DNA of 64,000 nucleotides. It comes from Laetmonice hystrix. Lineage: Eukaryota. The stretch spans positions 12,710,001 through 12,774,000 of the forward strand of contig OZ249452.1 in the NCBI GenBank assembly GCA_965235115.1, in the 5' to 3' direction. Positions 24,501-45,500 of this stretch are shown piece after piece (the stretch's first letter is position 1; the number at the start of each line of letters is the position of its first letter). Position numbers and translations under genes: made by a program. Below the pieces are notes generated by a model. The model was not told where the DNA came from. It saw only the letters and a list, made by a program, of their open reading frames with translations, and ran no database searches.

Positions 24501-27500
24501 ATTTTTTTCTTTTAAACAATTTTGGATAGACTTATTTAAGGAACCACCCCTCACCAGTGACGCTGAGTTTGGCCGTACAGCTGGCCTCGCCGGCCGCGTT
24601 CTTAGCGGTGACCTTGATCTCTCCCTCCTGTTCAGGGGTCACCTCGTCGATGAAGAGTGTGGCGTGATGCTCGCCGCGTGCCTGGCGGAAGTCCATCTCG
24701 ATCAGTTTGGTTGGCTCCAGCTTCGTGTCGCTCAGGTACCTGCCCCAGGCGAGGAGGGGGTAGACATGAGAATTGAGTATGCGATCATCGCCAAAAAGCA
24801 CTGCAACATGCCCCTTAATACAGGCCCGGTTTTTAGAAAAATGTTTTCGCCAACATTCGTCAGAAAAGTTGGCGAATCCAAAATCGCAACGTTCGTAAGC
24901 ATTCGCCGCTCAGTGAGATACTAGCTTTCGAATTGATTTTTGGGTGAGGAGGACAGCAACTTCCATCCCCCTCACAAAGTGAAAATCCGTAGTCCCACCC
25001 TTTCCTTACGGTTGACTTACCATGTTATTTCAGGGATGGGTTCTGCTTTCAGACTGCAGTCAAACCTTGCCCTCTGTCCCTCACGGAAGTCCTTGTCGTC
25101 GATAGTCCGAGTGAAGACTGGTTTCTCCAGTCGATCTGTGAGACCAAGTCATACACTGGAGGTTACACACGGCCTCTATACATTCAAGGTCCTATCTGAG
25201 CGGTTTCTATACATTGATCGTTTTAGTGTTGGTTTCTTGAGACAAAGACTAAAGGTTGGTGTCATTTAGTATTTCTAATCTATGTTTGTCACGATTTCAC
25301 TTAGCTTTAGTTTATTTACGTGCTAGATATATCGTCTACTCATAAATACTTTTTTGGTTGTCATGCACATAACAAATAACATTTGCTATTTTTTTCTTTG
25401 ATCTTCACTTAGTATCCTGGAATATTAGGTCAAGTTTTTCAATAGAAATGACTACAGAGAGTTTAGGATTGAAACGCGGCATAACGCAACGCCAAAACGC
25501 ATAACACGGATTGTGTGGGCATAGAGCTATAATTTTGTAATCCCAAGAACAAAAAGTTTTCATTAAAACATACTAGGGACATGGTGTGAGTGGAAAATAA
25601 ATTCATATTCGTAAACATGAAAAATGAAAATTGTAAAATAGTTATACCCACATTGGGTAACAAAAATGATAATCGTCGTAAAAATGTAAAAAATAAGGCC
25701 TAATATAGACGTACGAACCAAAGGGAAAACATGCCAATATGAACATGACTATCCTATTCAATATATCAAACCTATCTACTAAACAAAATTTCAAAAATAA
25801 AAAAGGTACTTTTTTATTTTGAACCAAAGAATCCTTGTCTAATGACTAAAGCATGCTGATATGATCGGTAAAAGGTAGAAGGTCGGCACATCCTTGTTTT
25901 ATTTTATATATACGTAGTTTACTTCGATCATAACACAAGACCATTAGATATACGACAGATCGGAATACAACATATCATCTTTTCTTCCCCTTCTGATTTA
26001 TTTTAATTAGGGGATGATTTCCTGAACTTTGTCACATTCTAAGTGTTTCTATTCAACTCCGTTTAACTGCACGTGAAGGAAGTGGGAATTTTAGTTGTCA
26101 AGGGTGAACTGTAAAATATGTACTGCAAATAAATAGGGACATGAGGCTAGCGATATCTGGTCTAATTGGTTTTATTCCAAGTAAATAAAGGCACTGAGTA
26201 AAAGGGGTTACTGAAAGCACCCTGTAATCCTTTACTCTGGATGGAACTTATTGTGATGAAGAAAAAAAACATTTAAAATTGCACAGAAACACAAATAAAA
26301 GACGAAAATGGAATTCAGCACAGGACAACTAAAGAGAAATCAAGCAAAGTTTGACCCTTCTTGTACTCCAGCGAGTCAAGTCTCAGCTTCTCAGTGCAAG
26401 AAGAGTCCAACTACAGAAACAGCACAAATGTACCCAGTGACACTAACGTACTCCATGACCCCTGGTCATGACCCACCTTTCTGTGGCTTGCCTTTCGGTT
26501 CCTCAGCTGGCTTGTCTGTGTTTGCAGGAGAGAGATTGACAATAAGCGGAGATCGGGAGACAGAGGAAAGGGCTGAGGTTATTCCATTGTGGTTCACGTG
26601 TTTTCATAACACAATTCTCGGGCAGAAACGAAATGAGGCACAGGCTTTAGAAAAGTCTATAAAAAATGACGTGTAAAGAGCTACAGTGTTATGGTCAAGA
26701 TTACTTCGTCTTCAAAACCTTATGATGCCAAAACGAGCAGTTTCATTTGAAAAACCACAAACCTTTTTGCAGCATAGACGAATATATTTTAATCTTTAGA
26801 AGGTAATGTTGTTATTGCAGCGGCCTGTATTATATTGGTCGGTGCTACAATATTACACCTGTGCACCATTATCGTTTCATACCCTTTACCACTATAAAGT
26901 AACCAGACCCCCAAGTAGGAATACTTCTGTAAGGATAGGCGTAAGAAGTGAGAAGGCGAGATAGATTGGAGGCTCATCTTCCAAGTCAGCCTCACAGCCG
27001 TTAAATTTCATCTTTAATACCAACAAGAAAAACAATCGGACCATATGAACAAGTAAAAGAGAATGATAACAATTATATTTGAAAAATATAATTACGAAAA
27101 ATTATGTAAAGAATTCAGCAGTTAATGTGGTCCTTGGCATGTGAGGCTGGCTTTACAATGTAAACATTTATGATACAAGACATTAAAGGCTATAAGCATA
27201 TAACCATTGATAAACTCCTATATAGTATGTCTATAGAGGGTTCATCAATATAGCACATCTATGTACATGATTAAACATTTGACTTAGAACTCGTAATATT
27301 AATCCTCTAGCATACAGCAAGCGTTTTTCTTTTCCAAAAGCATAAGCATCTCAAGCCCGCTTTGCCAATAAACCAAAGCCATCAGGTCAAAATTACCATG
27401 GCCAATAAGGATGATATTAAACTTTTAGAAGTACATGTCGCTTAAACCTGTACAGTATAGAGTAGGATATATATTTCACTAAAGATCATTAATGATTAAA

Positions 27501-30500
27501 AAGATATCTCTTGGTGCCGTGCCCCTTCCTTTGCTGCTTGTATCACATCTCGTAATAAACTTAACCCTGCAAGGAAGAAGGAAAGTCCAGATCATTTTTC
27601 CTGAAGTAGCACTGAAAAGATCACTTGACTTACCGGTAACGGTGATCGTTGCCTCGTGAACTGCCTCTCCAATGTTGTTCTTGGCGACGCACTTGTAAAC
27701 TCCGCCTTGTTTGGTGGTCACTTTGGGAATAGTCAAAGTGCTGACGTCACCCCTGGTAACGACCTTCAACTTCAGAGTCGGTGCCACTGCAGTGCCATCT
27801 CTGAAAAAAATGGCAATTTCATAATTAGGCATAGGTCATCAATTCTCAACTTTCTACTACTGTGCTTACAACAATCCTGATCGTGCTTATTTGATTTCAG
27901 CGTGATGAAACATGGAAGTCTACACTTACCTGTACCACGTGATCTGTGGGAGAGGTTTGCCCGTAAACTTGACCTTGAGCTGCAGCTGATCATTCTCCAC
28001 GAGAGTCTGGTGGGAAACCAACATCCGGTTACTTTCATATACAACCTCGGCTTGTCTAGCAGACATTGAGAATGTAGTCTCTTCACTGGGCCAAACACAA
28101 ACTTGTCTCTTTTCATCCTGAATTTATCAATGTACTACCTTACTAAGCTAAACATTTCAAAAATATCATTTAAGGCTGGAAATTTCACACTCACGTCCTC
28201 CTTGTAGACAGTGATGAATTCCGGATGTCCCTTCTTTTTGGGTTTCTCTGGGACTTTCTCTGGCGTCTCAGGGGACGGAGCCTTTGGTTTCTCCTCTGGT
28301 TTCCCCGCTTTGGGCTCTTCAACCTTCTGCGGGACCTCAGGTTCTGGTGCCTTTTCCGGTGTCTTTTCCTTTGGTTTACCTGGTTCTGGGGCAAGTTTGG
28401 TAAAAGAAGAATTAGTACATGAACTTGGATTCCCCTTTTGAAGTTGGGAAATTTATATTTAAATTGTTGCAAGGGATTCAAGTCGAATCCTGGCATTGAT
28501 CACATACCTTGAACAGTAACTCTAGCTTCATAGACGGCTTCTCCAACTTGGTTCTTAGCAACACATTTGTAGACGCCGCCTTGCTTCAAGGTAACCTTGG
28601 GGATGGTCAGCACACTGCTGTCCTGAGTTGTCACAATCTTGACCTTCAAACCTGGATGGACCTGGACCTCATCCCTGAGCCACTTGATCTGAGTCGGAGC
28701 TTTGCCGGTGAACTTGACCTTCAGCTCAAGTGGAGAATTCTCCAAGAGCTCCTAAAGAGGTTGTAAATTAATTATTTTAATTACTTTTTAAATTAAATTA
28801 TGAAAGATTACGAGAAAAGCTATGAGAAGAAACACGCTGAGTATGGTTCCTTTTATAAACACCACATCCTGCTAAAGATAGTACTGGTATCAATTTATAT
28901 GGATTAGTAATGAATCATGGCTGCAGAAAAAAATACACATACCACTTCTTCGTAAACCTCAGTAAATTCTGGGGTTCCTTTCTTCTTGGGCTTCTCCTCA
29001 GGTTTGGGCGCCTCAGGGGAAGGCTCTTTGAGCTTCTCTGGAGAAGGTTCCTTGGGCTTCTCCTCTGGTTTTCCAGGCTCTGGTTTAATTTCTTCTAGTG
29101 CCTTCTCTGGTGATTTCTCCTTTGGCTTCTCAGGTTCTGTGGAGTGGAAACATATTCACAAACGTTAATTAATCTTTCTGATACTGTGAGATTTAATGGT
29201 CAGTGTAATCTAATGCCTCCTCTGCCTTCAAAGGGTTTGAACTGTTGGCATTTTTGTCATTTGTCCAACTGCAATACTTGCAGATATATTTTTAAGACTC
29301 TTGAATGATTTTGTTTGCAAAGTATGATCATTCGCCACCCAGTTCTCCTTTTGACGTCACAATAGCATTTTTTGTGGCCTAGAATAAGAGTAGGCCTATA
29401 TCGAATTTACCTTTAACAATAACCAATGCTTCGTGTACAGCCTCTCCAACTTGGTTCTTGGCAACACATTTGTAGACGCCGCCTTGCTTCAAGGTAACCT
29501 TGGGGATGGTCAGTACACTGCTGTCCTGAGTTGTCACAATCTTGACCTTCAAACCTGGATGGACCTGGACCTCATCCCTGAGCCACTTGATCTGAGTCGG
29601 AGCTTTGCCGGTGAACTTGACCTTCAGCTCAAGTGGAGAATTCTCCAAGAGCTCCTAAAGAGGTTGTAAATTAATTATTTTAATTATTTGTCCAATTAAA
29701 TTACGGAAGAATACTAGAAACGCTACTAGAAGAAACACGCTGAGTATGATTACTTTTATAAACACCACATCCTGCTAAAGATAGTACTGGTATCAATTCA
29801 TATGGGTTAGTAATGAATCATGGCTGCAGGAGAAAATACACATACCACTTCTTCGTAAACCTCAGTAAATTCTGGGGTTCCCTTCTTCTTGGGCTTCTCC
29901 TCAGGTTTGGGTGCCTCAGGGGAAGGCTCTTTGAGCTTCTCTGGTGAAGGTTCCTTTGGCTTCTCCGGTGAAGGTTCCTTGGGCTTCTCTGCCGGTTCTT
30001 CAGGTACTGGTTTAACTTCCTCAGGTACTTTCTCTGGAGACTTTTCCTTTGGTTTCTCTGGTTCTGTGAGAAATGTGACACGTGCATATTTTAACTCTAA
30101 TTAATGTAATTCCTAAGTTGATTTGATATACTTTGTTTGACTTTTAAAATTGATTCACTACTGCAACTAATTTACTACCTCAACCATAACCGCCAAGGTA
30201 AATAAAGGTTTTCCTCAAACTTATTGTATTTATTCCTGGACATGATTACTCAAATTAAAGATGCCATAGCTTCATATCAGAAGAGAGCATTCAGAACATA
30301 CCTTGAACAGTAACCACTGCCTCATGTACAGCCTCTCCAACCTGGTTCTTGGCAACACATTTGTAGACGCCTCCTTGCTTCAAGGTAACCTTGGGGATAG
30401 TCAGCACACTGCTGTCCTGAGTTGTCACAATCTTTACCTTCAAACCTGGATGGACCTGGACCTCATCCCTGAGCCACTTGATCTGAGTTGGAGCCTTTCC

Positions 30501-33500
30501 AGTGAACTTAACTTTCAGTTCCAAACTTCTGTCAACTTGGAGATCCTGAAAAACAAAAATTCATTCGGTTTATTTTCTACTGCTCTATAATGAAATCCAT
30601 ATCAACATTTCTTGAGGGCTTCAAAATATAAACAAGGGTCTTCATTTACGTACTAAACATTTATACAAAACTTAAAAGAGAAGATTTAGATATAAATATT
30701 GAACATTAGATATTTACCACTTTCTCATAAACCTCCGTAAATTCTGGGGTTCCCTTTCTCTTGGGTTTCTCCTCAGGTTTGGGTGCCTCAGGGGAAGGCT
30801 CCTTGGGCTTTTCCGGTGAAGGTTCCTTGACAACTTCAGCTGGTTTCTCAGGTTCTACAATCTCCTGCACAGGTTCCTCAATGACAGGCTCTGGTACAGG
30901 CTCGGCTGGCTTCTCCTCAGGTTTAGGTTCCTCAGGTACAGGCTCTGCTGGTTGTTCAGGTTCAGGTTTCACCTCCTCAACCACAGGCTCTGGAACCTTT
31001 TCTGGTGATTTCTCCTTGGGTTTTTCAGGCTCTGTTAACAAAGTATTTCACCATGGAAAATTAAGTATCGAAATTAGATTCCTGGTAAGCTACTTTTATT
31101 GCTAACTTCGTTGTGTTTTTACCACTCTTTGTACTTCACATCTTACAAGAACTAAAACTTGAAAGGAAAACATACATACCTTGCACAATAACCTTGGACT
31201 CATAGACTGCTTCACCAATGTCATTCTTGGCAACACATTTGTACATGCCACCTTGCTTCAAGGTAACCTTGGGGATGGTCAACACACTGCTTTCCTGAGT
31301 TGTCACAATCTTGACCTTCAAACCCGGATGGACCGGAACCTCATCCCTGAACCACTTGATCTGAGTTGGAGCTTTTCCAGTGAACTTCACTGGAAGCTCC
31401 AGTTTCTCATCAACCATCATATCCTGTTTCAAAAATGTACCAGTGTTAGGACATAGGTAGTGCGAAATAGGACTTATATCTTAGTATGTATAATTGTGAC
31501 TAAATCAGTCCAAATATGCAATAGGCCTTGAGCAGTCCTAAAGTGCACTAAAAGTATATCTGCCTCCTTAAATGGAAAGCTACTTACCACTTCCTGGAAG
31601 ACTTCAGTAAACTCGGGAGTTCCCTTCTTCTTTGGCTTCTCCGGAATCTTCTCTGGAGATTTCTCTTTCGGTGCCTCCTCAGGTTTGGGTGCCTCAGGGG
31701 AAGGCTCCTTGGGCTTTTCCGGTGAAGGTTCCTTGACAACTTCAGCTGGTTTCTCAGGTTCTACAATCTCCTGCACAGGTTCTTCAACGACAGGCTCTGG
31801 TACAGGCTCGGCTCGCTTCTCCTCAGGTTTAGGTTCCTCAGGTACAGGCTCTGCTGGTTGTTCAGGTTCAGGTTTCACCTCCTCAACCACAGGCTCTGGA
31901 ACTTTCTCTGGTGATTTCTCTTTGGGCTTTTCAGGCTCTGTTAACAAAGTATTTTCCATCAAAAATTTAATACTGACTCAGATTTCTGAGTGGTTCTGGT
32001 AAGCTACTTCTGTTGTTAAAATCATTATTTTTCGCCCATGATTTCATTTAATATATTACAAGAAATAAGGTTGAACAGAAAACATACATACCTTGTACAA
32101 TAACCTTGGACTCATAGACTGCCTCACCAATGTCATTCTTGGCAACACATTTGTACATTCCACCTTGCTTCAAGGTAACCTTGGGGATGGTCAGCACACT
32201 GCTTTCCTGGGTTGTCACAATCTTGACCTTCAAACCCGGATGGACCGGAACCTCATCCCTGAACCACTTGATCTGAGTTGGAGCTTTTCCAGTGAACTTC
32301 ACCTGTAGCTCCAGTTTCTCATCAACCATCATATCCTGTTTCAAAAATGTGCCAGTGTTAGGACATGGGTAGTGCGAAAACGGACGTATATCTTAAATGT
32401 ATAACTGTGACTGAATCAGACCAAACATGCAATAGGCCTTGAACAGTCCTAAAGTGCACTAAAAATATATCTTCCTGCTTAAATAGAAAGCTACTTACCA
32501 CTTCCTGGAAGCCTTCAGTAAACTCGGGAGTTCCCTTCTTCTTTGGCTTCTCCGGAATCTTCTCTGGAGATTTCTCTTTCGGTGCCTCCTCAGGTTTGGG
32601 TGCCTCAGGGGAAGGCTCCTTGGGCTTTTCCGGTGAAGGTTCCTTGACAACTTCAGCTGGTTTCTCAGGTTCTACAATCTCCTGTACAGGTTCCTCAATG
32701 ACAGGCTCTGGTACAGGCTCAGCTGGCTTCTCCTCAGGTTTCGGTTCCTCAGGTACAGGCTCTGCTGGTTGTTCAGGTTCAGGTTTCACCTCCTCAACCA
32801 CAGGCTCTGGAACCTTCTCTGGTGATTTCTCTTTGGGCTTTTCAGGCTCTGTTAACAAAGTATTTTCCATGAAAAATTTAATATTGACTCAGATTTCTGA
32901 GTAGTTCCTGGTAAGCTACTTCTGTTGTTAAAATCATTATTTTTCGCCCATGATTTCATTTCATATATTACAAGAAATAAAGGTTGAACGGAAAACATAC
33001 ATACCTTGTACAATAACCTTGGACTCATAGACTGCCTCGCCAATGTCATTCTTGGCAACACATTTGTATATGCCACCTTGCTTTAAGGTAACCTTGGGGA
33101 TAGTCAGCACACTGCTTTCCTGAGTTGTCACAATCTTGACCTTCAAACCCGGATGGACCGGAACCTCATCCCTGAACCACTTGATCTGAGTTGGAGCTTT
33201 TCCAGTGAACTTCACTGGAAGCTCCAGTTTCTCATCAACCATCATATCCTGTTTCAAAAATGTGCCAGTGTTAGGACATGGGTAGTGCGAAATAGGACTT
33301 ATATCTTGGTATGTATAATTGTGACTGAATCAGTCCAAATCTGCAATAGGCCTTGAGCAGTCCTAAAGTGCACTAAAAATATACCTTCCTGCTTAAATGG
33401 AAAGCTACTTACCACTTCCTGGAAGACTTCAGTAAACTCGGGAGTTCCCTTCTTCTTTGGCTTCTCCGGAATCTTCTCTGGAGATTTCTCTTTCGGTGCC

Positions 33501-36500
33501 TCCTCAGGTTTGGGTGCCTCAGGGGAAGGCTCCTCTGGCTTTTCTGGTGAAGGTTCCTTGACAACTTCAGCTGGTTTCTCAGGTTCTACAATCTCCTGCA
33601 CAGGTTCTTCAATGACAGGCTCTGGTACAGGCTCGGCTGGCTTCTCCTCCGGTTTAGGTTCCTCAGGTACAGGCTCTGCTGGTTGTTCAGGTTCAGGTTT
33701 CACCTCCTCAACCACAGGCTCTGGAACCTTCTCTGGTGATTTCTCCTTGGGTTTTTCAGGCTCTGTTAACCAAGCATTTACCATGGAAAATTGAGTATCG
33801 AAATTAGATTTCTGGTAAGCTACTTTTATTGCTAACTTCTTTATGTTTTTACCACTCTCTGTACTTCACATCTTACAAGAGCTAAAACTTGAAAGGAAAA
33901 CACACATACCTTGCACAATAACCTTGGACTCATAGACTGCTTCACCAATGTCATTCTTGGCAACACATTTGTACATGCCACCTTGCTTCAAGGTAACCTT
34001 GGGGATAGTCAGCACACTGCTTTCCTGAGTTGTCACAATCTTGACCTTCAAGCCTGGATGGACCGGAACCTCATCCCTGAACCACTTGATCTGAGTTGGA
34101 GCTTTTCCAGTGAACTTCACTGGAAGCTCCAGTTTCTCATCAACCATCATATCCTGTTTCAAAAATGTGCCAGTGTTAGGACATGGGTAGTGCGAAAACG
34201 GACGTATATCTTAAATGTATAATTGTGACTGAATCAGACCAAACATGCAATAGGCCTTGAACAGTCCTAAAGTGCACTAAAATAAACCTTCCTGCTTAAA
34301 TGGAAAGCTACTTACCACTTCCTGGAAGACTTCAGTAAACTCGGGAGTTCCCTTCTTCTTTGGCTTCTCCGGAATCTTCTCTGGAGATTTCTCTTTCGGT
34401 GCCTCCTCAGGTTTGGGTGCCTCAGGGGAAGGCTCCTCTGGCTTTTCTGGTGAAGGTACCTTGACAACTTCAGCTGGTTTCTCAGGTTCTACAATCTCCT
34501 GCACAGGTTCTTCAAGGACAGGCTCTGGTACAGGCTCAGCTGGCTTCTCCTCAGGTTTAGGTTCCTCAGGTACAGGCTCTGCTGGTTGTTCAGGTTCAGG
34601 TTTCACCTCCTCAACCACAGGCTCTGGAACCTTCTCTGGTGATTTCTCTTTGGGCTTTTCAGGCTCTGTTAACAAAGTATTTTCCATGAAAATTTAATAT
34701 TGACTCAGATTTCTGAGTAGTTCCTGGTAAGCTACTTCTGTTGTTAAAATCATTATTTTTCGCCCATGATTTCATTTCATATATTACAAGAAATAAGGTT
34801 GAACAGAAAAGATACATACCTTGTACAATAACCTTGGACTCATAGACTGCCTCGCCAATGTCATTCTTGGCAACACATTTGTATATGCCACCTTGCTTCA
34901 AGGTAACCTTGAGGATAGTCAGCACACTGCTTTCCTGAGTTGTCACAATCTTGACCTTCAAACCCGGATGGACCGGAACCTCATCCCTGAACCACTTGAT
35001 CTGAGTTGGAGCTTTTCCAGTGAACTTCACTGGAAGCTCCAGTTTCTCATCAACCATCATATCCTGTTTCAAAAATGTGCCAGTGTTAGGACATGGGTAG
35101 TGCGAAATAGGACTTATATCTTAGTATGTATAATTGTGACTGAATCAGTCCAAATCTGCAATAGGCCTTGAGCAGTCCTAAAGTGCACTAAAAATATACC
35201 TTCCTGCTTAAATGGAAAGCTACTTACCACTTCCTGGAAGACTTCAGTAAACTCGGGAGTTCCCTTCTTCTTTGGCTTCTCCGGAATCTTCTCTGGAGAT
35301 TTCTCTTTCGGTGCCTCCTCAGGTTTGGGTGCCTCAGGGGAAGGCTCCTCTGGCTTTTCTGGTGAAGGTTCCTTGACAACTTCAGCTGGTTTCTCAGGTT
35401 CTACAATCTCCTGCACAGGTTCCTCAATGACAGTCTCTGGTACAGGCTCGGCTGGCTTCTCCTCAGGTTTAGGTTCCTCAGGTACAGGCTCTGCTGGTTG
35501 TTCAGGTTCAGGTTTCACCTCCTCAACCACAGGCTCTGGAACCTTCTCTGGTGATTTCTCCTTGGGTTTTTCAGGCTCTGCTAACAAAGCATTTACCATG
35601 GAAAATTGAGTATCGAAATTAGATTTCTGGTAAGCTACTTTTATTGCTAACTTCTTTATGTTTTTACCACTCTCTGTACTTCACATCTTACAAGAGCTAA
35701 AACTTGAAAGGAAAACACACATACCTTGCACAATAACCTTGGACTCATAGACTGCTTCTCCAATGTCATTCTTGGCAACACATTTGTACATGCCTCCTTG
35801 CTTCAAGGTAACCTTGGGGATAGTCAGCACACTGCTTTCCTGAGTTGTCACAATCTTGACCTTCAAGCCTGGATGGACCGGAACCTCATCCCTGAACCAC
35901 TTGATCTGAGTTGGAGCTTTTCCAGTGAACTTCACTGGAAGCTCCAGTTTCTCATCAACCATCATATCCTGTTTCAAAAATGTGCCAGTGTTAGGACATG
36001 GGTAGTGCGAAAACGGACGTATATCTAAAATGTATAATTGTGACTGAATCAGACCAAACATGCAATAGGCCTTGAACAGTCCTAAAGTGCACTAAAATAT
36101 ACCTTCCTGCTTAAATGGAAAGCTACTTACCACTTCCTGGAAGACTTCAGTAAACTCGGGAGTTCCCTTCTTCTTTGGCTTCTCCGGAATCTTCTCTGGA
36201 GATTTCTCTTTCGGTGCCTCCTCAGGTTTGGGTGCCTCAGGGGAAGGCTCCTCTGGCTTTTCTGGTGAAGGTTCCTTGACAACTTCAGCTGGTTTCTCAG
36301 GTTCTACAATCTCCTGCACAGGTTCTTCAATGACAGGCTCTGGTACAGGCTCAGCTGGCTTCTCCTCAGGTTTAGGTTCCTCAGGTACAGGCTCTGCTGG
36401 TTGTTCAGGTTCAGGTTTCACCTCCTCAACCACAGGCTCTGGACCCTTCTCTGGTGATTTCTCTTTGGGCTTTTCAGGCTCTGTTAACAAAGTATTTTCC

Positions 36501-39500
36501 ATGAAAAATTTATTATTGACTCAGATATCTGAGTAGTTCCTGGTAAGCTACTTCTGTTGTTAAAATCATTATTTTTCGCCCATGATTTCATTTCATATAT
36601 TACAAGAAATAAGGTTGAACAGAAAACATACATACCTTGTACAATAACCTTGGACTCATAGACTGCCTCGCCAATGTCATTCTTGGCAACACATTTGTAC
36701 AATCCACCTTGCTTCAAGGTAACCTTGGGGATAGTCAGCACACTGCTTTCCTGAGTTGTCACAATCTTGACCTTCAAACCCGGATGGACCGGAACCTCAT
36801 CCCTGAACCACTTGATCTGAGTTGGAGCTTTTCCAGTGAACTTCACTGAAAGCTCCAGTTTCTCATCAACCATCATATCCTGTTTCAAAAATGGACCAGT
36901 GTTAGGACATGTGTAGTGCGAAAACGGACGTATATCTTAAATGTATAATTGTGACTGAATCAGACCAAACATGCAATAGGCCTTGAACAGTCCTAAAGTG
37001 CACTAAAAATATACCTTCCTGCTTAAATAGAAAGCTACTTACCACTTCCTGGAAGACTTCAGTAAACTCGGGAGTTCCCTTCTTCTTTGGCTTCTCCGGA
37101 ATCTTCTCTGGAGATTTTTCTTTTGGTGCCTCCTCAGGTTTGGGTGCCTCAGGGGAAGGCTCCTTGGGCTTTTCCGGTGAAGGTTCCTTGACAACTTCAG
37201 CTGGTTTCTCAGGTTCTACAATCTCCTGCACAGGTTCCTCAATGACAGGCTCTGGTACAGGCTCAGCTGGCTTCTCCTCAGGTTTCGGTTCCTCAGGTAC
37301 AGGCTCTAGTAGTTGTTCAGGTTCAGGTTTCACCTCCTCAACCACAGGCTCTGGAACCTTCTCTGGTGATTTCTCTTTGGGCTTTTCAGGCTCTGTTAAC
37401 AAAATATTTAACATGGAAAATTTAATATTGACTCAGATTTATAAGTAGTTCCTGGTTAGCTACTTTTGTTGTTAAAATCATTATTTTTTTGCCAATGATT
37501 TTATTTCATATATTACAAGAAATAAGGTTGAACAGAAAACATACATACCTTGTACAATAACCTTGGACTCATAGACTGCCTCGCCAATGTCATTCTTAGC
37601 AACACATTTGTAAAGGCCTCCTTGCTTCGGCGAAACCTTGGGGATGGTCAGCACACTGCTGTCCTGAGTTGTCACAATCTTGACCTTCAAACCTGGATGG
37701 ACTGGAACCTCATCCCTGAACCACTTGATCTGAGTTGGAGCTTTTCCAGCGAACTTCACCTGTAGCTCCAGTTTCTCGTTGACAGTCATATCCTGTTTCA
37801 ACAATGTATCAATGTTAGCAAATTGGCAGTGCAAAATAGAATATATGTTAATGTGAATTATTGTAACTGAACCAGCCCAAATATGTCATGACCTTTAAAC
37901 AGTCCTAATGGTCACTAAAAATACAGGACAGCTTAATTGTTAAATAGCTTACCACTTCCTGGAAGACTTCAGTAAACTCGGGAGTTCCCTTTCTCTTTGG
38001 CTTCTCCGGAATCTTCTCTGGAGATTTAGATTTCTCTTTCGGTGCCTCCTCAGCTTCTGGTGCCTCAGGGGATGGCTCCTCGGGCTTCTCTGGTGAAGGT
38101 TCTTTTGGCTTCTCTGGTGAAGGTTCCTTGGGCTTCTCTGGTGAAGGTTCCTTGGGCTTCTCTGGTGAAGGTTCCTTGACCACCTCCTCTGGTTTCTGAG
38201 GTTCTACAATCTCCTGCACAGGTTCCTCAATGACAGGCTCTGGTACAGGCTCCGCTGGCTTCTCCTCAGGTTTCGGTTCCTCAGGTAGAGGCTCTGCTGG
38301 TTGTTCAGGTTCAGGTTCAGGTTGCACCTCCTCAACCACAGGCTCTGGAACCTTCTCTGGTGATTTCTCCTTGGGCTTTTCAGGCTCTGTTAACAAAGCA
38401 TTTACCAAGGAAACTTAATTATCAGGTCACATGCTTTGACAGGCCGAAATGTACTTCTTTTTCTTAAAATTGTTACTTTTTTTATTACCGTTATAGAAAT
38501 GAAGGCTGAAAGGAAAACATACATACCTTGCACAATAACCTTGGACTCATAGACTGCTTCACCAATGTCGTTCTTGGCAACACATTTGTATACACCACCT
38601 TGCTTCAAGGTAACCTTGGGGATGGTCAGCACACTGCTTTCCTGAGTTGTCACAATCTTGACCTTCAAACCTGGATGGACTGGAACCTCATCCCTGAACC
38701 ACTTGATCTGAGTTGGAGCTTTTCCAGCGAACTTCACCTGTAGCTCCAGTTTCTCATCAACAGTCATATCCTGTTTCAACAATGTATCAGTGTTAGGAAA
38801 TTGGCAGTGCAATATAGAATATATGTCAATGTGAATCACTGTAACTGAATCGTTCCAAATGTGTAATGGCTCTTAAACAGTCCTACTGGTCACTAAAAAT
38901 ATGCGACAGCTTAATATGGAATGTAACTTACCACTTCCTGGAAGACTTCAGTAAACTCGGGAGTTCCCTTCCTCTTTGGCTTCTCCGGAATCTTTTCAGG
39001 AGATTTAGATTTCTCTTTCGGTGCCTCCTCAGCTTCTGGTGCCTCAGGGGATGGCTCCTCCGGCTTCTCTGGTGAAGGTTCCTTGGGTTTCTCTGGAGAA
39101 GGTTCCTTGGGCTTCTCTGGAGAAGGTTCTTTCGGCTTCTCTGGAGAAGGTTCCTTGACCACCTCCTCTGGTTTCTCAGGTTCTACAATCTCCTGCACAG
39201 GTTCCTCAATGACAGGCTCTGGTACAGGCTCGGCTGGCTTCTCTTCAGGTTTCGGTTCCTCAGGTAGAGGTTCTGCTGGTTGTTCAGGTTCAGGTTTCAC
39301 CTCCTCAACCACAGGCTCTGGAACTTTCTCTGGTGATTTCTCCTTGGGCTTGCCAGGCTCTGTTAATAAAGCATTTACCATGGACACTTAAATATCAGGT
39401 CACATGCTTTAAAAGGCCTAAAATGACTTCTTTTTCTTAAAATTGTTACTTTTTTTTATTACCGTTATAGAAATGAAGGCTGAAAGGAAAACATACATAC

Positions 39501-42500
39501 CTTGCACAATAACCTTGGATTCATAGACTGCTTCACCAATGTCGTTCTTGGCAACACATTTGTAGACACCACCTTGCTTCGGCGTAACCTTGGGGATGGT
39601 CAGCATACTGCTTTCCTGAGTTGTCACAATCTTGACCTTCAAGCCTGGATGGACCGGAACCTCATCCCTGAACCACTTGATCTGAGTTGGAGCTTTTCCA
39701 GTAAACTTCACCTGTAGCTCCAGTTTCTCATCAACCGTCATATCCTGTTTCAAAAATGTATCAGTGTTAGGAAATTGGCAGTGAAAAATAGAATATATTT
39801 CAATGTGAATCATTGTAACTGAATCAGACCAAATGTGTAATGGCTCTTAAACAGTCCTACTGGTCACTAAAAATATGCGACAGCTTAAATGGAATGTAAC
39901 TTACCACTTCCTGGAAGACTTCAGTAAACTCGGGAGTTCCCTTCCTCTTTGGCTTCTCCGGAATCTTTTCTGGAGATTTAGATTTCTCTTTTGGTGCCTC
40001 CTCAGTTTCTGGTGCCTCAGGGGATGGCTCCTCCGGCTTCTCTGGAGAAGGTTCCTTGGGCTTCTCTGGTGAAGGTTCCTTGGGCTTCTCTGGAGAAGGT
40101 TCCTTGGGCTTCTCTGGTGAAGGTTCCTTGGGCTTCTCCGGTGAAGGTTCCTTGGGCTTTTCCGGTGAAGGTTCCTTGGGCTTCTCCGGTGAAGGTTCCT
40201 TGGGCTTCTCGGGAGAAGGTTCCTTGACCACCTCCTCTGGTTTCTCAGGTTCTACAATCTCCTGCACAGGTTCCTCAATGACAGGCTCTGGTACAGGCTC
40301 GGCTGGCTTCTCTTCAGGTTGTTCAGGTTCAGGTTTCACCTCCTCAACCACAGGCTCTGGAACTTTCTCTGGTGATTTCTCCTTGGGCTTGCCAGGCTCT
40401 GTTAATAAAGCATTTACCATGGACACTTAAATATCAGGTCACATGCTTTAAAAGGCCTAAAATGACTTCTTTTTCTTAAAATTGTTAATTTTTTATTACC
40501 GTTATAGGAATGAAGGCTGAAAAGAAAAACTACATACCTTGCACAATAACCTTGGACTCATAGACTGCTTCACCAATGTCGTTCTTGGCAACACATTTGT
40601 AGACACCTCCTTGCTTCGGCGTAACCTTGGGGATGGTCAGCACACTGCTGTCCTGAGTTGTCACAATCTTGACCTTCAAACCTGGATGGACCGGAACCTC
40701 ATCCCTGAACCACTTGATCTGAGTTGGAGCTTTTCCAGTGAACTTCACTGGAAGCTCCAGTTTCTCATCAACAGTCATATCCTGTTTCAATAATGTATCA
40801 ATGTTAGGAAATTGGCACGGAAAAATAGAATATATGTTAATGTGAATCATTGTAACTGAATCAGCCCAAATGTGTAATGACTTTTAAACCGTCCTAATGG
40901 TCACTAAAAATACAGGACAGCTTAATTGTTAAGTAACTTACCACTTCCTGGAAGACTTCAGTAAACTCGGGAGTTCCCTTTCTCTTTGGCTTCTCCGGAA
41001 TCTTTTCAGGAGATTTAGATTTCTCTTTCGGTGCCTCCACAGCTTCTGGTGCCTCAGGGGATGGCTCCTCCGGCTTCTCCGGTGAAGGTTCCTTTGGCTT
41101 CTCTGGTGAAGGTTCCTTGGGCTTCTCTGGTGAAGGTTCCTTGGGCTTCTCTGGTGAAGGTTCCTTGGGCTTCTCTGGAGAAGGTTCCTTGGGCTTCTCT
41201 GGTGAAGGTTCCTTGGGCTTCTCTGGAGAAGGTTCCTTGGGCTTCTCCGGTGAAGGTTCCTTTGGCTTCTCTGGAGAAGGTTCCTTGACAACCTCCGCTG
41301 GTTTCTCTGGTTCTACAATCTCCTGCACAGGTTCCTCAATGACAGGCTCTGGTACAGGTTCGGCTGGCTTCTCTTCAGGTTTCGGTTCCTCAGGTAGAGG
41401 CTCTGCTGGTTGTTCAGGTTCAGGTTTCACCTCCTCAACCACAGGCTCTGGAACCTTCTCTGGTGATTTCTCCTTGGGCTTGCCAGGCTCTGTTACAAAG
41501 CATTTACCACGGACACTTAAATATCAGGTCACATGCTTTAAAAGGCCTAAAATGATTTCTTTTTTTTAAATTGTTACTTTTTTATTACCGTTATATGAAT
41601 GAAGGTTGAAAGGAAAACATACATACCTTGCACAATAACCTTGGATTCATAGACTGCGTCACCAATGTCGTTCTTGGCAACACATTTGTAGACACCTCCT
41701 TGCTTCAGCGTAACCTTGGGGATGGTCAGCACACTGCTTTCCTGAGTTGTCACAATTTTGACCTTCAAACCTGGATGGACCGGAACCTCATCCCTGAACC
41801 ACTTGATCTGAGTCGGAGCTTTTCCAGTGAACTTCACCTGTAGCTCCAGTTTCTCATTGACAGTCATATCCTGGAATGAGGGTGAAATGTTAAAATTGCA
41901 AGGGTTATGGTACACTGAACATAAAGTTAATCTTTATATAAATCTAATGATTAATACAAAAAAATATAAATCAAATGGCAGGTGACATACCACTTCCTGG
42001 AAGACTTCAGTGAACTCGGGAGTGCCCTTTCTCTTTGGCTTCTCCGGAATCTTTTCAGGAGATTTAGATTTCTCCTTAGGTGCTTCCTCAGGTTTCGGTG
42101 CCTCAGGGGATGGTTCTTCAGGCTTTTCAGGAGAAGGTTCCTTGGGCTTCTCTGGTGATGGTTCCTTGGGCTTTTCAGGAGAAGGTTCCTTGGGCTTTTC
42201 AGGCGAAGGCTCCTTTTTCTCCTCGGGCGCAACTTCTGGCACAACCTCTTCTGGGGTCTTTTCAGGAGACTTTTCAGGTGTTCTTTTTGGTGATGCTGGG
42301 TCAGTGTCAGAAAAGTTACATAATACATTAGGAGGGCTGATAAGCGGCTGATGATAACTGGCGTATTTTCTGTTTACTTTCAGTAGTTGTATATCTTGCA
42401 TTCTATAAATTCCTTTTATTGAATAATTAATGGTATATGATCCAAATTTAACAGTTATCCACTTGACACTTTACAATATGATACTAATCCGACTTACCAA

Positions 42501-45500
42501 TGACTTTCAGTGTTGCTGTGCACGTGTCCTCGCCAGCAGGATTCTTAGCCACAAACTTAAATGTTGCTGTGTCTTCGGGTTGAGCCTTTTCAATGGTCAA
42601 CCCCAAATGGACTTCTCCGGCAACATCCTTAGTGTCTACCTTTATATGGTCATCCTTCTCCACTGGTTGGTCATCCTTGCACACAGTTATATCAGGTTTA
42701 GGAAGCCCCTTGGCACGGACACCATACTTGACTGGTTGATCTTCCTTGACCTCTTTGTTCATGGGCCTCAAAGTGAACTTCGCAGGTTCCATTTTTTCAC
42801 AGACGGTGACGGTAGCAGAGTGCTCTGCTTGGCCAAACTTGTTGGTGGCAACAGTTCTGTATGTGCCGGACATCTGCTTGGTGACTCCCGTGATAGTCAG
42901 TGTGCACTGTTCGTCCACTCGGGTTATCTTGTTCTTGAAGGTTGGTTTCAGTTCTATAGTGTCGCGGTACCATTTGACCTCTGGCTCAGGTTTTCCAATG
43001 ACCTTACTTTTCAGGATCAGTGTCTTTTTCTGCTCCAGCGTCTATGAAAAAGCGATAAATCTCAATCAAAACTGAACTCTTCACTACGTCATAAATTTAA
43101 GACATATTAAATTTAGGAGAATCTTCCCTTTCCTTACTCTTGTCCCTGTATCAATGCATTCAATTCTTCTTTGAGTTATCCATATCTATTGCCTGGTATG
43201 TGTGAATGTGTATAAAAATAGCATTGTTTGTATTGTGCATGAAGTTATTTTATTTTACTCTAGAACCTAATAATAAAACTAGATGACTTGTATGCTGCTA
43301 CTCACCACACTCTCATACACCTCGACGAACTGTGGTTCGTTGGTTTTCTTCGGTTCCACATCCAGCATGAACGTGCAGGAAACCTCTCCGAACGGATTTC
43401 TTGCGATGACTTGATATTCACCAACATCATTAGGTGTGACCTCAGTGATTTCTAGATGGTGAAGGTCATATTTGAAGGTCACCCTGTAACGTCCTTCAGG
43501 TTTGATTTCCTCTCCGTTGTAGAACCAGGTGACGTCAGGAGTGGGTTCACCAATCACTTGACAACTGAAGTTTGCAGTCTGACCATCAGTAACCTTACTG
43601 TTCTTGGGTTTGATGACAAACTCCGGAGCCGTACCCTGGGGTTCCTCAGGTGCAGGAGCTTCAGGCTCTGCTCAGGACAGAACCAGAACGCTGTCATTTC
43701 AGACTGATAACGACAGACATCTACCTCAGGGTTGTGCTAAATTATCTTGTTCCCAGGACCCAGTTCGTAAAAACTTAAGATCTTGCTTAAGTTTTAACCT
43801 GAAGGCTTCTGATTGGCTGGTCTTGTAAATTGAGGGATCTATTGTTTCCAGGTCCAAACAGGAAACAGGTTATGTATAGGGATAAATCAATACGACCTCT
43901 GCTAATATTAGACTCTATGCACAGTTAAAAACATTGGAAACATTTTTTTCTTACTGGAGTACGGCACTATCGTTTCGGGAGGGGGAAGGTTCAGGGGGGG
44001 GGGGGGGGTTGAACCCCCCTCCCTTGGCAGTCATCTTTTCTGTTTTTCCCTATAGAACTTTCTGTATTCATCCTGGTGCCCCCCTTAGCAAATACTACCC
44101 CTGAATCCCAACCCCCCTATAAAACTACAGAAACGTGAATACGTCTAAATACCCTTTACATGGAGAAATCAAAATATCAAACTACTACGGCACAGATATA
44201 GTGTACCTAGGACGCTGACGTAGACAGTAAAAGTATCCGAGCCCACTGGGTTGGTGATGGTTACGGTGTATGGAGCCTCATCCGTTTTCTGAGCGTCAGT
44301 AATCACCAAGGTAACCGTATCCATGGTGCTGTCCATCTGGTACTTGTCGCTAGGGGTGAGCGTGGTGTCTGGAGTAGACCAGGTCGGTTGTGGTTGGGGG
44401 ACTCCCTCGTATGTACACGTTATGGTGACCGTCTCACTTTGCATCACAGTGATCGACTCCGGGCCACTCAGGAACCGAGGGCCCTGGGGAGCTGCAGGGT
44501 CAACAGGAGCTTGGCATTTAGAGTTATGATTTAAATTGGGTTTTATAGTTCAGCAACAGCTAAAGTCTGAGTGAGGCGGCCAGATTTATTGGAGGACATG
44601 ACTGGAGTATCCGGGGAAATCACCGACCTGACGGCAAGTATCTGATAGACTTCCTCACAAGTGGCTCAAGGGGGAATCGATTCCGGAAACTTGTGACACT
44701 GGGCCACAGCCGTTCTAACAAATTTCAAGACAGGTGTTTTATGATATCTGCCGATTCTAATGTGAAACCAGGCACATATTGTCTGGAGCCAAATACAGTA
44801 AACTTGGAGAAGCGGTGTCGACTTTTTAAAGTTCGGGTTAGGTCCTCAATTATAATATTTTGCCCTCTTTTCTTTTGTTTTCATAATAATCTAATATAAT
44901 ATGAAGGTTGGAGGTAGGGGGTGGGGTGGATGCGTGGATCATGCCTATTGAAAGGATGTTTACGGATGAGAGAATAGTAGCACTAAAGTACTGGGATATC
45001 ATCACAGTATTGTAAAGCCTTTTGTAACACTAAGTCAAGAAGTTAGTTTGCGGAGACATTGAGTCTAATAACATGCGTTTCAAGGATATAAATTATGGAT
45101 AAAGAGATACAGAGAATACATCCACTTACTTACCAATCCCTAAATACAACTACCGGGTAACAATCGTAGCCGTGATGTCCGTAAATACACGCATATTTTT
45201 TTTTATCGTGGCCCCAAATATGAGACAAGCTGATGCTTACTTCCAAAAATATGGTCCAAAATGCCAAGTGTTTACCAAACCAGAGATTTACGTATGGTTC
45301 TTTACGCTTGCTTTGTTTACATTCCGAAATTTACATTTCCTTTTCTCAGAATTGTGCCCACTGCCAGATTGGGTACACGAATACAGGTCTTCATAAATAT
45401 CCGGGTGGGATACTGGTTGTTTCTTGGGGTGTCTTCAATGGGATATCTTCTATATTCCTTCAAGTCCTACTGGATGAAATTTTGTTTTTAATTATTTCTT

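What the first reader, a model, noticed from the sequence alone, without database searches (positions are those of the whole stretch)
27634..42295. 16-unit 'beads-on-springs' array: PEVK-like linker alternating with one near-identical Ig
Seen in sequence: each unit is a P/E/V/K-rich exon (191-548 nt, phase 1->0) that also encodes the Ig A strand (PEFTEVFQEV), plus a 244-nt Ig exon (phase 0->1). Single exons cannot be skipped in frame; only whole units can, or a unit can be rejoined to another unit's Ig. Established: vertebrate titin keeps PEVK as one block after N2A, separate from the tandem Igs. Here PEVK-like springs are interleaved with Igs and lie upstream of the N2A-like module. Inference: spring length could be adjusted in whole-unit steps by splicing or copy-number variation.
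Basis: partly seen in the sequence, partly recalled or inferred. Interest (0 to 1): 0.7.

Follow-up and report, generated by a model that had tools for sequence, protein, structure and literature searches.

The report
Spring-and-Ig repeat array, worm titin
A giant titin-like muscle gene of a marine worm contains 16 tandem copies of a two-exon unit (a floppy, proline/glutamate-rich linker plus one Ig domain). The array is real, spliced and expressed, and it grows and shrinks quickly in evolution, but alternating Ig and PEVK-like segments are, to my recollection, already described in worm and amphioxus titins.

Summary
On the minus strand, 42295-27634 holds 16 units. Each is a P/E/V/K-rich exon of 191-548 nt (phase 1 to 0, ending PEFTEVFQEV|GT) plus a 244-nt I-set Ig exon (phase 0 to 1); the sixteenth Ig is split 77+167. 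Spliced, the array gives an open 3,159-residue chain.

- Pfam places the Ig exon at I-set positions 13-90, so the linker exon's last ten residues are the A strand.
- Ig exons are under purifying selection (dN/dS 0.07-0.24).
- Spliced contigs of one run with no intron coverage (so RNA) use the predicted junctions exactly.
- This Ig type and this linker occur nowhere else in the 627-Mb genome.

A close relative carries about 13 units between the same flanks. More distant relatives keep the "linker + A strand" exon but have two or three Igs per linker. Copies 7-8 and 9-10 are 99% identical, so amplification is recent.

It is most likely an entropic-spring segment of an annelid I-band titin. Alternating Ig and PEVK-like segments are, from my memory of Ohtsuka 2011, reported for amphioxus connectin and the Neanthes 4000K protein. 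I therefore rate it a new member of a known kind. Whole-unit splicing remains untested. The N2A label has no sequence support.

The parts
43306..43667 (-). Upstream proto-unit, exon 1 (362 nt, phase 1 to 0): short P/E linker + one complete Ig + EPKKTNE + A strand PQFVEVYESV|GTGAGT
   Evidence: the acceptor cag|AGCCTGAAGC is very like those of array units 5-13 (cag|AGCCTGAAAA)
42498..43041 (-). Upstream proto-unit, exon 2 (544 nt, phase 0 to 1): Ig-a (strands B-G) + a complete Ig-b. This is the exon that is tandemly amplified in relatives L001/L002
41627..42295 (-). Unit 1: linker exon 42295-41991 (305 nt); Ig exon 41870-41627 (244 nt)
40538..41489 (-). Unit 2: linker exon 41489-40942 (548 nt, nine 24-nt repeats); Ig exon 40781-40538
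39501..40398 (-). Unit 3: linker exon 40398-39905 (494 nt, eight 24-nt repeats); Ig exon 39744-39501
38527..39359 (-). Unit 4: linker exon 39359-38932 (428 nt); Ig exon 38770-38527
37549..38386 (-). Unit 5: linker exon 38386-37953 (434 nt); Ig exon 37792-37549
36636..37392 (-). Unit 6: linker exon 37392-37043 (350 nt); Ig exon 36879-36636
   Evidence: the Ig6-to-linker7 junction fits RNA contig record 28
35725..36480 (-). Unit 7: linker exon 36480-36131 (350 nt); Ig exon 35968-35725
34820..35577 (-). Unit 8: linker exon 35577-35228 (350 nt; tandem acceptor ttagcag); Ig exon 35063-34820
33910..34665 (-). Unit 9: linker exon 34665-34316 (350 nt); Ig exon 34153-33910. Units 9-10 are a 99.1% copy of units 7-8
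33005..33762 (-). Unit 10: linker exon 33762-33413 (350 nt); Ig exon 33248-33005
32092..32848 (-). Unit 11: linker exon 32848-32499 (350 nt; A strand has V to G, PEFTEGFQEV); Ig exon 32335-32092
31180..31937 (-). Unit 12: linker exon 31937-31588 (350 nt); Ig exon 31423-31180
   Evidence: RNA joint 31031|31180
30302..31031 (-). Unit 13: linker exon 31031-30718 (314 nt); Ig exon 30545-30302
29411..30063 (-). Unit 14: linker exon 30063-29846 (218 nt); Ig exon 29654-29411 (donor GTAAAT). No RNA contig was laid here
28508..29136 (-). Unit 15: linker exon 29136-28943 (194 nt); Ig exon 28751-28508
27634..28385 (-). Unit 16 (oldest, divergent): linker exon 28385-28195 (191 nt); Ig split into 28006-27930 (77 nt) and 27800-27634 (167 nt)
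   Evidence: both introns are confirmed by RNA contig record 25, joints 28006|28195 and 27800|27930
41072..41287 (-). 24-nt tandem repeat (9 copies, 94% matches) inside linker exon 2; encodes the octapeptide PEKPKEPS
40035..40226 (-). 24-nt tandem repeat (8 copies, 95% matches) inside linker exon 3

Best explanation
This is an extensible I-band segment of a titin/connectin-type muscle gene. Other notes of this scan call the animal a marine annelid; I did not test that.

Shown:
- Sixteen tandem genomic units of about 0.75-1.1 kb each encode a 53-172-residue linker followed by one I-set Ig domain.
- The linker is aromatic-free and acidic (27% P, 28% E, 17% K, 9% V).
- The Ig's A strand is carried on the linker exon.
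- The exons are spliced at canonical sites and expressed.
- The Ig exons are under purifying selection.
- The array grew by recent tandem duplication of one-unit and two-unit (1.8 kb) blocks, and by expansion of a 24-nt repeat inside linker exons.
- Its edges are positionally orthologous to a related species, while its middle is species-specific.

Inferred:
- The linkers act as entropic springs. Their summed contour length is about 640 nm, against about 70 nm for the 16 folded Igs.
- The Igs act as folded spacers and as a high-force reserve.
- Because every unit is phase 1 to phase 1 overall, unequal crossing-over or whole-unit exon skipping changes spring length in frame.
For: - Exon anatomy and phases.
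- Open 3,159-aa spliced frame with 81% P+E+V+K linkers.
- I-set match at model positions 13-90, with no Pfam family for the linkers.
- The best solved relatives are titin I65-I70 and I67-I69.
- dN/dS is 0.07-0.24.
- X4 contigs lie only on exons. They carry joints 27800|27930, 28006|28195 and 31031|31180, plus linker-to-Ig and Ig-to-linker joints of the unit 6-12 family.
- Both exon types are unique to this locus in the genome.
- Units 7-8 and 9-10 differ at 17 bases and 2 gap columns over 1,815 bp. Between sub-families the introns are 67-84% identical and the Ig exons 82-95% (82-89% against units 13-15, 90-95% between units 1-5 and 6-12).
- A related contig has about 13 units between the same flanking Ig exons. 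Its first Ig is closest to our unit 1 (91%), and one of its three retrieved Ig ORFs (P0004, position on the contig not determined) is closest to our units 13-15 (89-92%).
- The 'linker + A strand' exon, with a phase-1 acceptor and a phase-0 donor, is conserved in three further loci that have two or three Igs per linker.
- The array Ig is most like Ig-a, the upstream Ig cut by the same intron (38-51% identity versus 21-36% for other Igs).
- In Drosophila, inclusion of Sls PEVK exons tracks and sets sarcomere and I-band length: PMC12063666.
Against: - No mechanical or localisation data exist.
- The tissue of the RNA run is unknown.
- No RNA contig was laid on linker 14, Ig 14, linker 15 or the 3' end of linker 13. 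Contigs show presence, not absence, but full inclusion of all 16 units is therefore unproven.
- The linker has no detectable sequence homology to vertebrate PEVK. A profile search of 1.84 billion proteins found one related ORF only, so 'PEVK-like' is a statement about composition.
- The copy number rests on one assembly. DNA contigs of the same sample break inside the repeats and do not span the array.
Confidence: 0.75

Rival explanations
1. The array is a regulated cassette system. Muscles include different numbers of whole units, or join a linker exon to a later unit's Ig exon, to set spring length. It extends the best explanation rather than excluding it.
For: - Every linker exon is 2 mod 3 and every Ig exon is 1 mod 3, so only whole-unit changes keep the frame.
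- The nearest solved relatives are Igs of titin's I-band tandem-Ig region, I65-I70.
- PEVK exon choice in Drosophila Sls is specific to muscle type.
- No RNA contig covers unit 14 or linker 15.
Against: - Every RNA joint seen is compatible with adjacent-exon splicing. The 'goes back' joints are explained by units outside the laid stretch.
- No skipping joint was reported.
- The uncovered exons cannot all be skipped in frame while Ig 13 and Ig 15 are both present, so the gap looks technical.
- There is only one small RNA run, kept as contigs.
Confidence: 0.3
2. The array is a kettin-type thin-filament binder. Each Ig-plus-linker module would bind one actin protomer, so the array would stiffen or measure the thin filament rather than act as a spring.
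For: - Kettin is 35 Igs separated by short linkers and binds actin at one module per protomer (PMC2196178).
- DFRxxL actin-binding-type motifs were noted upstream in the same gene by another agent (unchecked).
Against: - Linker lengths vary from 53 to 172 residues between neighbouring units, which does not fit a fixed actin period.
- Relatives have one, two or three Igs per linker.
- The linkers carry a net charge of about -10 per 100 residues and have no aromatic residues. This is a poor match for binding acidic actin.
Confidence: 0.08
3. The count of 16 is partly an assembly artefact, or several units are dead exons that are never included.
For: - Units 7-8 and 9-10 are 99.1% identical.
- Short-word contigs of the source sample break inside the repeats.
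- No RNA contig covers unit 14.
Against: - All copies differ from one another, and the longest identical run between the two youngest blocks is 299 bp.
- All 32 acceptor and donor pairs are intact and the frame is open throughout.
- dN/dS is 0.07 even within the youngest family.
- Summed word depth on the linker 5' block shared by 12 units is about 6-12 times that of the unique flank in three DNA runs. The tool warns that this figure is not a copy number.
- An independent assembly of a relative has about 13 units.
Confidence: 0.07

Closest known systems
'Ig-PEVK region' of amphioxus connectin and of the Neanthes (polychaete) 4000K connectin-like protein (Ohtsuka et al. 2011, J Mol Biol 409:415). 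The reference is confirmed. Its content is from my memory of the abstract and could not be read.
   Same: It is an I-band region of an invertebrate titin in which Ig domains alternate with PEVK-like segments. If the genome is a polychaete's, this array may be the genomic counterpart or an orthologue.
   Different: I could not compare sequences. The following may go beyond what was published, but I cannot verify that: the exon design (A strand on the linker exon, phases 1-0-1), the 99% identical two-unit duplications, the change of unit count between species, and the variants with one, two or three Igs per linker.
Drosophila Sallimus/kettin (I-band titin)
   Same: It has Ig domains separated by linkers, and PEVK exons whose inclusion is muscle-specific and sets sarcomere and I-band length (PMC2196178; PMC12063666).
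   Different: Kettin linkers are short and bind actin one module per protomer. The Sls PEVK sequence lies in a few large exons, not interleaved one-to-one with near-identical Igs.
Vertebrate titin I-band (differentially spliced tandem Ig + PEVK)
   Same: The Ig type matches: the best solved hit is titin I65-I70. The spring is rich in P, E, V and K. The human I-band also grew by tandem duplication of Ig blocks that are used for isoforms (PMC12198301).
   Different: In vertebrates the PEVK region is one block of many small exons, separate from the Igs (established knowledge). Natural neighbouring Igs are divergent, for example I27/I28 at 24% identity, whereas neighbours here are 90-100% identical. 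No sequence homology of the linker was detected.
Split-Ig exon array of a second titin-like gene, 8.3 Mb away on the same chromosome (scan note s1-353731, unchecked)
   Same: It is also a tandem array in an annelid titin-like gene in which introns cut inside Ig domains, so that each exon carries linker plus parts of an Ig.
   Different: There the intron sits in a glycine codon within the Ig, and each exon is half-Ig/linker/half-Ig. Here the intron follows the A strand and there are two exons per unit.

Membership tests
Titin/connectin-family I-band spring region | Tandem I-set Ig domains of titin type | tested here: met
   PF07679 matches at E 6e-15 to 1e-15 for single Ig exons. The best solved matches are titin I65-I70 and I67-I69.
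Titin/connectin-family I-band spring region | A disordered segment dominated by P, E, V and K | tested here: met
   The linker exons are 81% P+E+V+K. The linkers have no F, W, Y, M or C and match no Pfam family.
Titin/connectin-family I-band spring region | Sequence homology of the linker to vertebrate PEVK (PPAK/polyE) modules | tested here: not met
   A profile of 17 linker sequences searched against 1.84 billion representative proteins found one ORF of a close relative only. The internal repeat is an octapeptide, not a module of about 28 residues.
Titin/connectin-family I-band spring region | Position between the Z-disc part and the A-band/kinase part of one giant gene | not tested
   Only other agents' notes place a Z-disc-like region upstream in the same gene. 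Within the window the array is flanked by I-set exons on both sides.
Titin/connectin-family I-band spring region | Expression in muscle and extension on stretch | not testable with these tools
   Expression as spliced RNA is shown. The tissue and the mechanics are unknown.
Ig-PEVK region (Neanthes 4000K / amphioxus connectin) | Regular alternation of an Ig domain with a PEVK-like segment | tested here: met
   Sixteen consecutive units.
Ig-PEVK region (Neanthes 4000K / amphioxus connectin) | Sequence similarity to the published 4000K or amphioxus segments | not testable with these tools
   The published sequences and the paper are not held. The searchable protein sets returned only unnamed ENA/JGI ORFs.
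Kettin-type actin-binding Ig-linker modules | Short linkers of roughly constant length, giving one module per actin protomer | tested here: not met
   Linkers are 53-172 residues and vary between neighbours. The kettin description is from PMC2196178.
Titin N2A element (for the module said to lie downstream) | A unique sequence between Igs that is recognisably related to UN2A | tested here: inconclusive
   The layout Ig-Ig-unique-Ig-Ig-Ig exists at 21689-18358. The 129-aa unique ORF has no Pfam hit and no solved relative (best E 0.34, a designed protein).

The most novel reading that the evidence does not exclude
The array is a fast-evolving spring that varies in copy number, and whose neighbouring Ig domains are 90-100% identical. 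This breaks the rule that neighbouring tandem domains diverge to avoid long-lived misfolding. The long, acidic, S/T-P-rich linkers, possibly phosphorylated, would be what lets identical neighbours coexist. Unit number, set by unequal crossing-over or by whole-unit splicing, would tune passive stiffness between populations or between muscles.
Probability: 0.2. Interest if true: 0.6.

Novelty: new member of a known kind. Interest (0 to 1): 0.4.

Why it matters

It shows how such springs evolve:
- One conserved exon design, linker plus A strand, is followed by one, two or three Igs.
- That design is amplified independently in different lineages.
- Array edges are conserved and array centres turn over.

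It also offers a natural test case for two open questions. The first is whether spring length is tuned in quantal steps. The second is how near-identical neighbouring Ig domains escape the misfolding seen for engineered identical titin tandems. The basic architecture itself is not new for invertebrate titins.

Tried and rejected
- Back-splicing or exon shuffling. The 'goes back' joints of the RNA run (32334 to 31587 and 32848 to 32092) looked like this at first. I rejected it. The laid stretch ended at 33000, and one joint fits the ordinary Ig6-to-linker7 junction exactly. The other fits the unit 7-12 family apart from a few bases.
- Skipping of unit 14. Zero RNA depth over 28801-30200 is not evidence. 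The uncovered exons cannot all be skipped in frame, and contigs show presence only.
- Distant homologues of the linker. A word-index search and an exhaustive profile search found only P0001.
- The Ig exon as query found only three ORFs, all from one related ENA sample; each lies on the same 31.9-kb contig, one of them also on a second, 7.1-kb contig. DNA of that sample could not be fetched.
- Literature. 'Ig-PEVK', '4000K', 'Neanthes + connectin' and 'PEVK + obliquely striated' gave nothing usable. Ohtsuka 2011 and Fukuzawa 2001 are not held.
- The idea that long linkers simply prevent domain-swap misfolding is not backed by what I read. Simulations found that linkers up to 20 residues can favour swapped misfolds (PMC4862688). 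I keep it only as an open question.
- Structure prediction of a spliced unit was not attempted, because spliced sequences are not contiguous window sequences.
- Taxon. I did not verify 'annelid'. It comes from other agents' notes.


Full report
**Observation.** The gene runs on the minus strand. A six-frame scan found 15 copies of PEFTEV between 42020 and 28972, spaced about 900-1,100 bp apart. Each is followed exactly ten codons after the P by a consensus donor (GTAAGT, GTATGT or GTAAAT).

Working back in frame to the acceptor (cag|AGCCTG... or cag|AACC...) gives linker exons of 305, 548, 494, 428, 434, 350 (seven times), 314, 218 and 194 nt. Each is followed by a 244-nt exon bounded by AG and GT. 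A sixteenth, divergent unit has a 191-nt linker exon (28385-28195, ending HPEFITVYKED|GTGAGT). Its Ig is cut by one extra intron into 77 + 167 = 244 nt and ends at 27634.

All linker exons are 2 mod 3 and all Ig exons are 1 mod 3. Joined, the 33 exons give 9,480 nt with no stop codon, encoding 3,159 residues.

**What the exons encode.** The 244-nt exon is an I-set Ig, matching PF07679 at E about 1e-15. It aligns only to model positions 13-90 of 90. A complete single-exon Ig just upstream begins model position 1 at its own 'PEF'. The nearest solved structures are titin I65-I70 and I67-I69.

The rest of each linker exon (53-172 residues, 1,688 in all) is 27% P, 28% E, 17% K and 9% V. It has no F, W, Y, M or C, carries a net charge of about -10 per 100 residues, and matches no Pfam family. 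Length differences between units come mostly from a 24-nt repeat encoding PEKPKEPS, present in 1 to about 10 copies. Of 89 serines in the linkers, 84 are followed by proline.

**Is it real and used?** Among the paralogous Ig exons dN/dS is 0.07-0.24, and variable sites by codon position are 20/10/44. Between sub-families the Ig exons are 82-95% identical (82-89% against units 13-15, 90-95% between units 1-5 and 6-12), while the introns are 67-84% identical.

Four public runs of one sample hold the stretch. Three behave as genomic DNA. The fourth, X4, has contigs only on exons, with zero depth on introns and on the flank. Its contigs carry joints with CT..AC ends, which read GT..AG on the coding strand, at 27800|27930, 28006|28195 and 31031|31180. 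These are exactly the predicted introns. X4 also carries linker-to-Ig and Ig-to-linker joints of the unit 6-12 family.

Two of those joints were reported as 'goes back'. I traced this to the laid stretch ending at 33000. One fits the ordinary Ig6-to-linker7 junction exactly. So the exons are expressed and spliced as predicted. No RNA contig lay on linker 14, Ig 14, linker 15 or the 3' end of linker 13. Those exons cannot all be skipped in frame while Ig 13 and Ig 15 are present, and contigs show presence only, so I draw no conclusion from the gap.

**Assembly.** The genome is 627 Mb in 35 contigs. Both the Ig type and the linker type occur only in this array, so there is no second haplotig or paralogous array. 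All copies are distinguishable. The two youngest blocks, units 7-8 and 9-10, differ at 17 bases and 2 gap columns over 1,815 bp, and their longest identical run is 299 bp. Short-word DNA contigs break inside the repeats and do not span the array. The exact count of 16 therefore rests on the assembly, though it is plausible.

**History.** Identity matrices define four groups: units 1-5, units 6-12, units 13-15 and unit 16. Intron types alternate within units 5-12, which points to duplication in two-unit steps.

A 31.9-kb contig of a related organism (ENA ERZ26222911) has Ig exons 86-89% identical in protein. Between the same flanking Ig ORFs it carries about 13 alternating units of a no-family ORF and an 81-aa Ig ORF. 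The linker ORFs are long at the 5' end (277, 274 and 258 aa), uniform in the middle (171 aa, four times) and short at the 3' end. Its first Ig is closest to our unit 1 (91%). A second of the three Ig ORFs retrieved from this sample (P0004, whose position on the contig I did not determine) is closest to our units 13-15 (89-92%). The third, a cluster of nine member sequences, is equally distant from all of our units 1-12. This suggests that the array edges are orthologous and the centre turns over independently. A second, 7.1-kb contig of that sample has different linker-ORF lengths (265, 258, 258 and 214 aa).

Using the upstream two-Ig exon as bait, I found more distant relatives whose DNA could be read.
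- In L001 and L002 the tandem unit is a 170-nt P/E/V/K exon (...EPKEKTPEKSPEKEPVVEEV...LEFIEVYEEM|GT; phase-1 acceptor, phase-0 donor) followed by the two-Ig exon. This unit recurs at least 9-10 times.
- In L003 and L004 a PEPE-rich exon ending PPVFTEVYQDTV|GT precedes a two-Ig exon, which is followed by a further Ig exon.

The 'linker + A strand' exon is thus conserved, while the number of Igs per linker is lineage-specific (one, two or three).

In the window, the same intron position and phases occur once just upstream of the array, in exons 43667-43306 and 43041-42498. The array Ig is most like that exon's first Ig, at 38-51% identity against 21-36% for other Igs. Unit 16 is the closest of all. 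This fits an origin from such a proto-unit, with the 3' end of the array being the oldest part.

**Mechanism.** The steps above are shown. What follows is inferred. The linkers are disordered entropic springs with a summed contour length of about 640 nm, against about 70 nm for 16 folded Igs. The Igs act as spacers and as a reserve at high force. The phase 1-to-1 unit makes unequal crossing-over and whole-unit skipping frame-neutral.

Precedent exists in Drosophila, where inclusion of Sls PEVK exons is muscle-specific and changes sarcomere and I-band length. The same paper says lophotrochozoans have two titins with mixed features (PMC12063666).

A kettin-like actin-ruler role is unlikely. Kettin has short linkers and binds actin at one module per protomer (PMC2196178), whereas these linkers are long, acidic and variable in length.

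**Comparison and novelty.** From memory, the abstract of Ohtsuka et al. 2011 describes an 'Ig-PEVK region' in amphioxus connectin similar to that of the Neanthes 4000K protein. I confirmed that the reference exists but could not read it. If my memory is right, the architecture is known for exactly this animal group. I therefore file the array as a new member of a known kind.

The linker shows no detectable homology to anything beyond one close relative, so 'PEVK-like' refers to composition only.

One feature deserves attention. Neighbouring Igs are 90-100% identical, whereas natural titin neighbours are divergent (I27/I28 are 24% identical), and identical engineered neighbours form long-lived misfolds (PMC4660218). 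Whether the long linkers relieve this is open. Simulations with linkers of up to 20 residues point the other way (PMC4862688).

**Verdict.** The array is real, expressed and evolving quickly. Interest is moderate, at 0.4.

Noticed in passing
window 43667-43306 and 43041-42498 (minus strand): A single 'proto-unit' lies just upstream of the array and uses the same intron position and phases (362 nt, 2 mod 3; 544 nt, 1 mod 3). Its A strand PQFVEVYESV is split from a two-Ig exon. That two-Ig exon is the unit amplified in relatives L001/L002.
   Followed up: yes
L001:1-12300 and L002:5700-20630: A more distant relative carries at least 9-10 tandem units of a 170-nt P/E/V/K exon ending LEFIEVYEEM|GT plus a two-Ig exon. 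That is one linker per two Igs. The array is present on two contigs of one sample.
   Followed up: partly
L003:4700-14700; L004:764-2300: In still more distant relatives a PEPE-rich linker exon ending PPVFTEVYQDTV|GT precedes a two-Ig exon and then a further Ig exon, so about three Igs follow each linker. L004 comes from a JGI metagenome.
   Followed up: partly
window 27634-42295, linker exons: 84 of 89 serines and 19 of 21 threonines in the linkers are followed by proline, and SPEK occurs 67 times. This is a very high density of candidate proline-directed phosphorylation sites and could modulate spring stiffness.
   Followed up: no
window 28801-30200 and 30601-30800: The RNA-like run X4 has no contig on linker 14, Ig 14, linker 15 or the 3' end of linker 13, although Ig 13, Ig 15 and unit 16 are covered. 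The cause is probably technical, but it is worth checking with long-read cDNA.
   Followed up: partly
window 35577-35583 (minus strand): The linker-exon acceptor of unit 8 is a tandem ttag|cag acceptor. Use of the upstream AG would add one codon. The other units have aacag.
   Followed up: no
window 32499-32528: Unit 11 alone has a V-to-G change inside the A strand (PEFTEGFQEV).
   Followed up: no
window 20156-20542 (minus strand): A 129-aa E/K-rich unique ORF lies between Ig exons, in the layout Ig-Ig-unique-Ig-Ig-Ig. It has no Pfam family and no solved relative. This is the 'N2A-like' module of another note.
   Followed up: partly
window 27001-28600: The DNA runs of the one sample disagree at many single bases here: X1 matches the assembly, while X2 and X3 carry the other letter. 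There is also a 3-base deletion at 27182. This suggests that two haplotypes or two individuals were sequenced.
   Followed up: no
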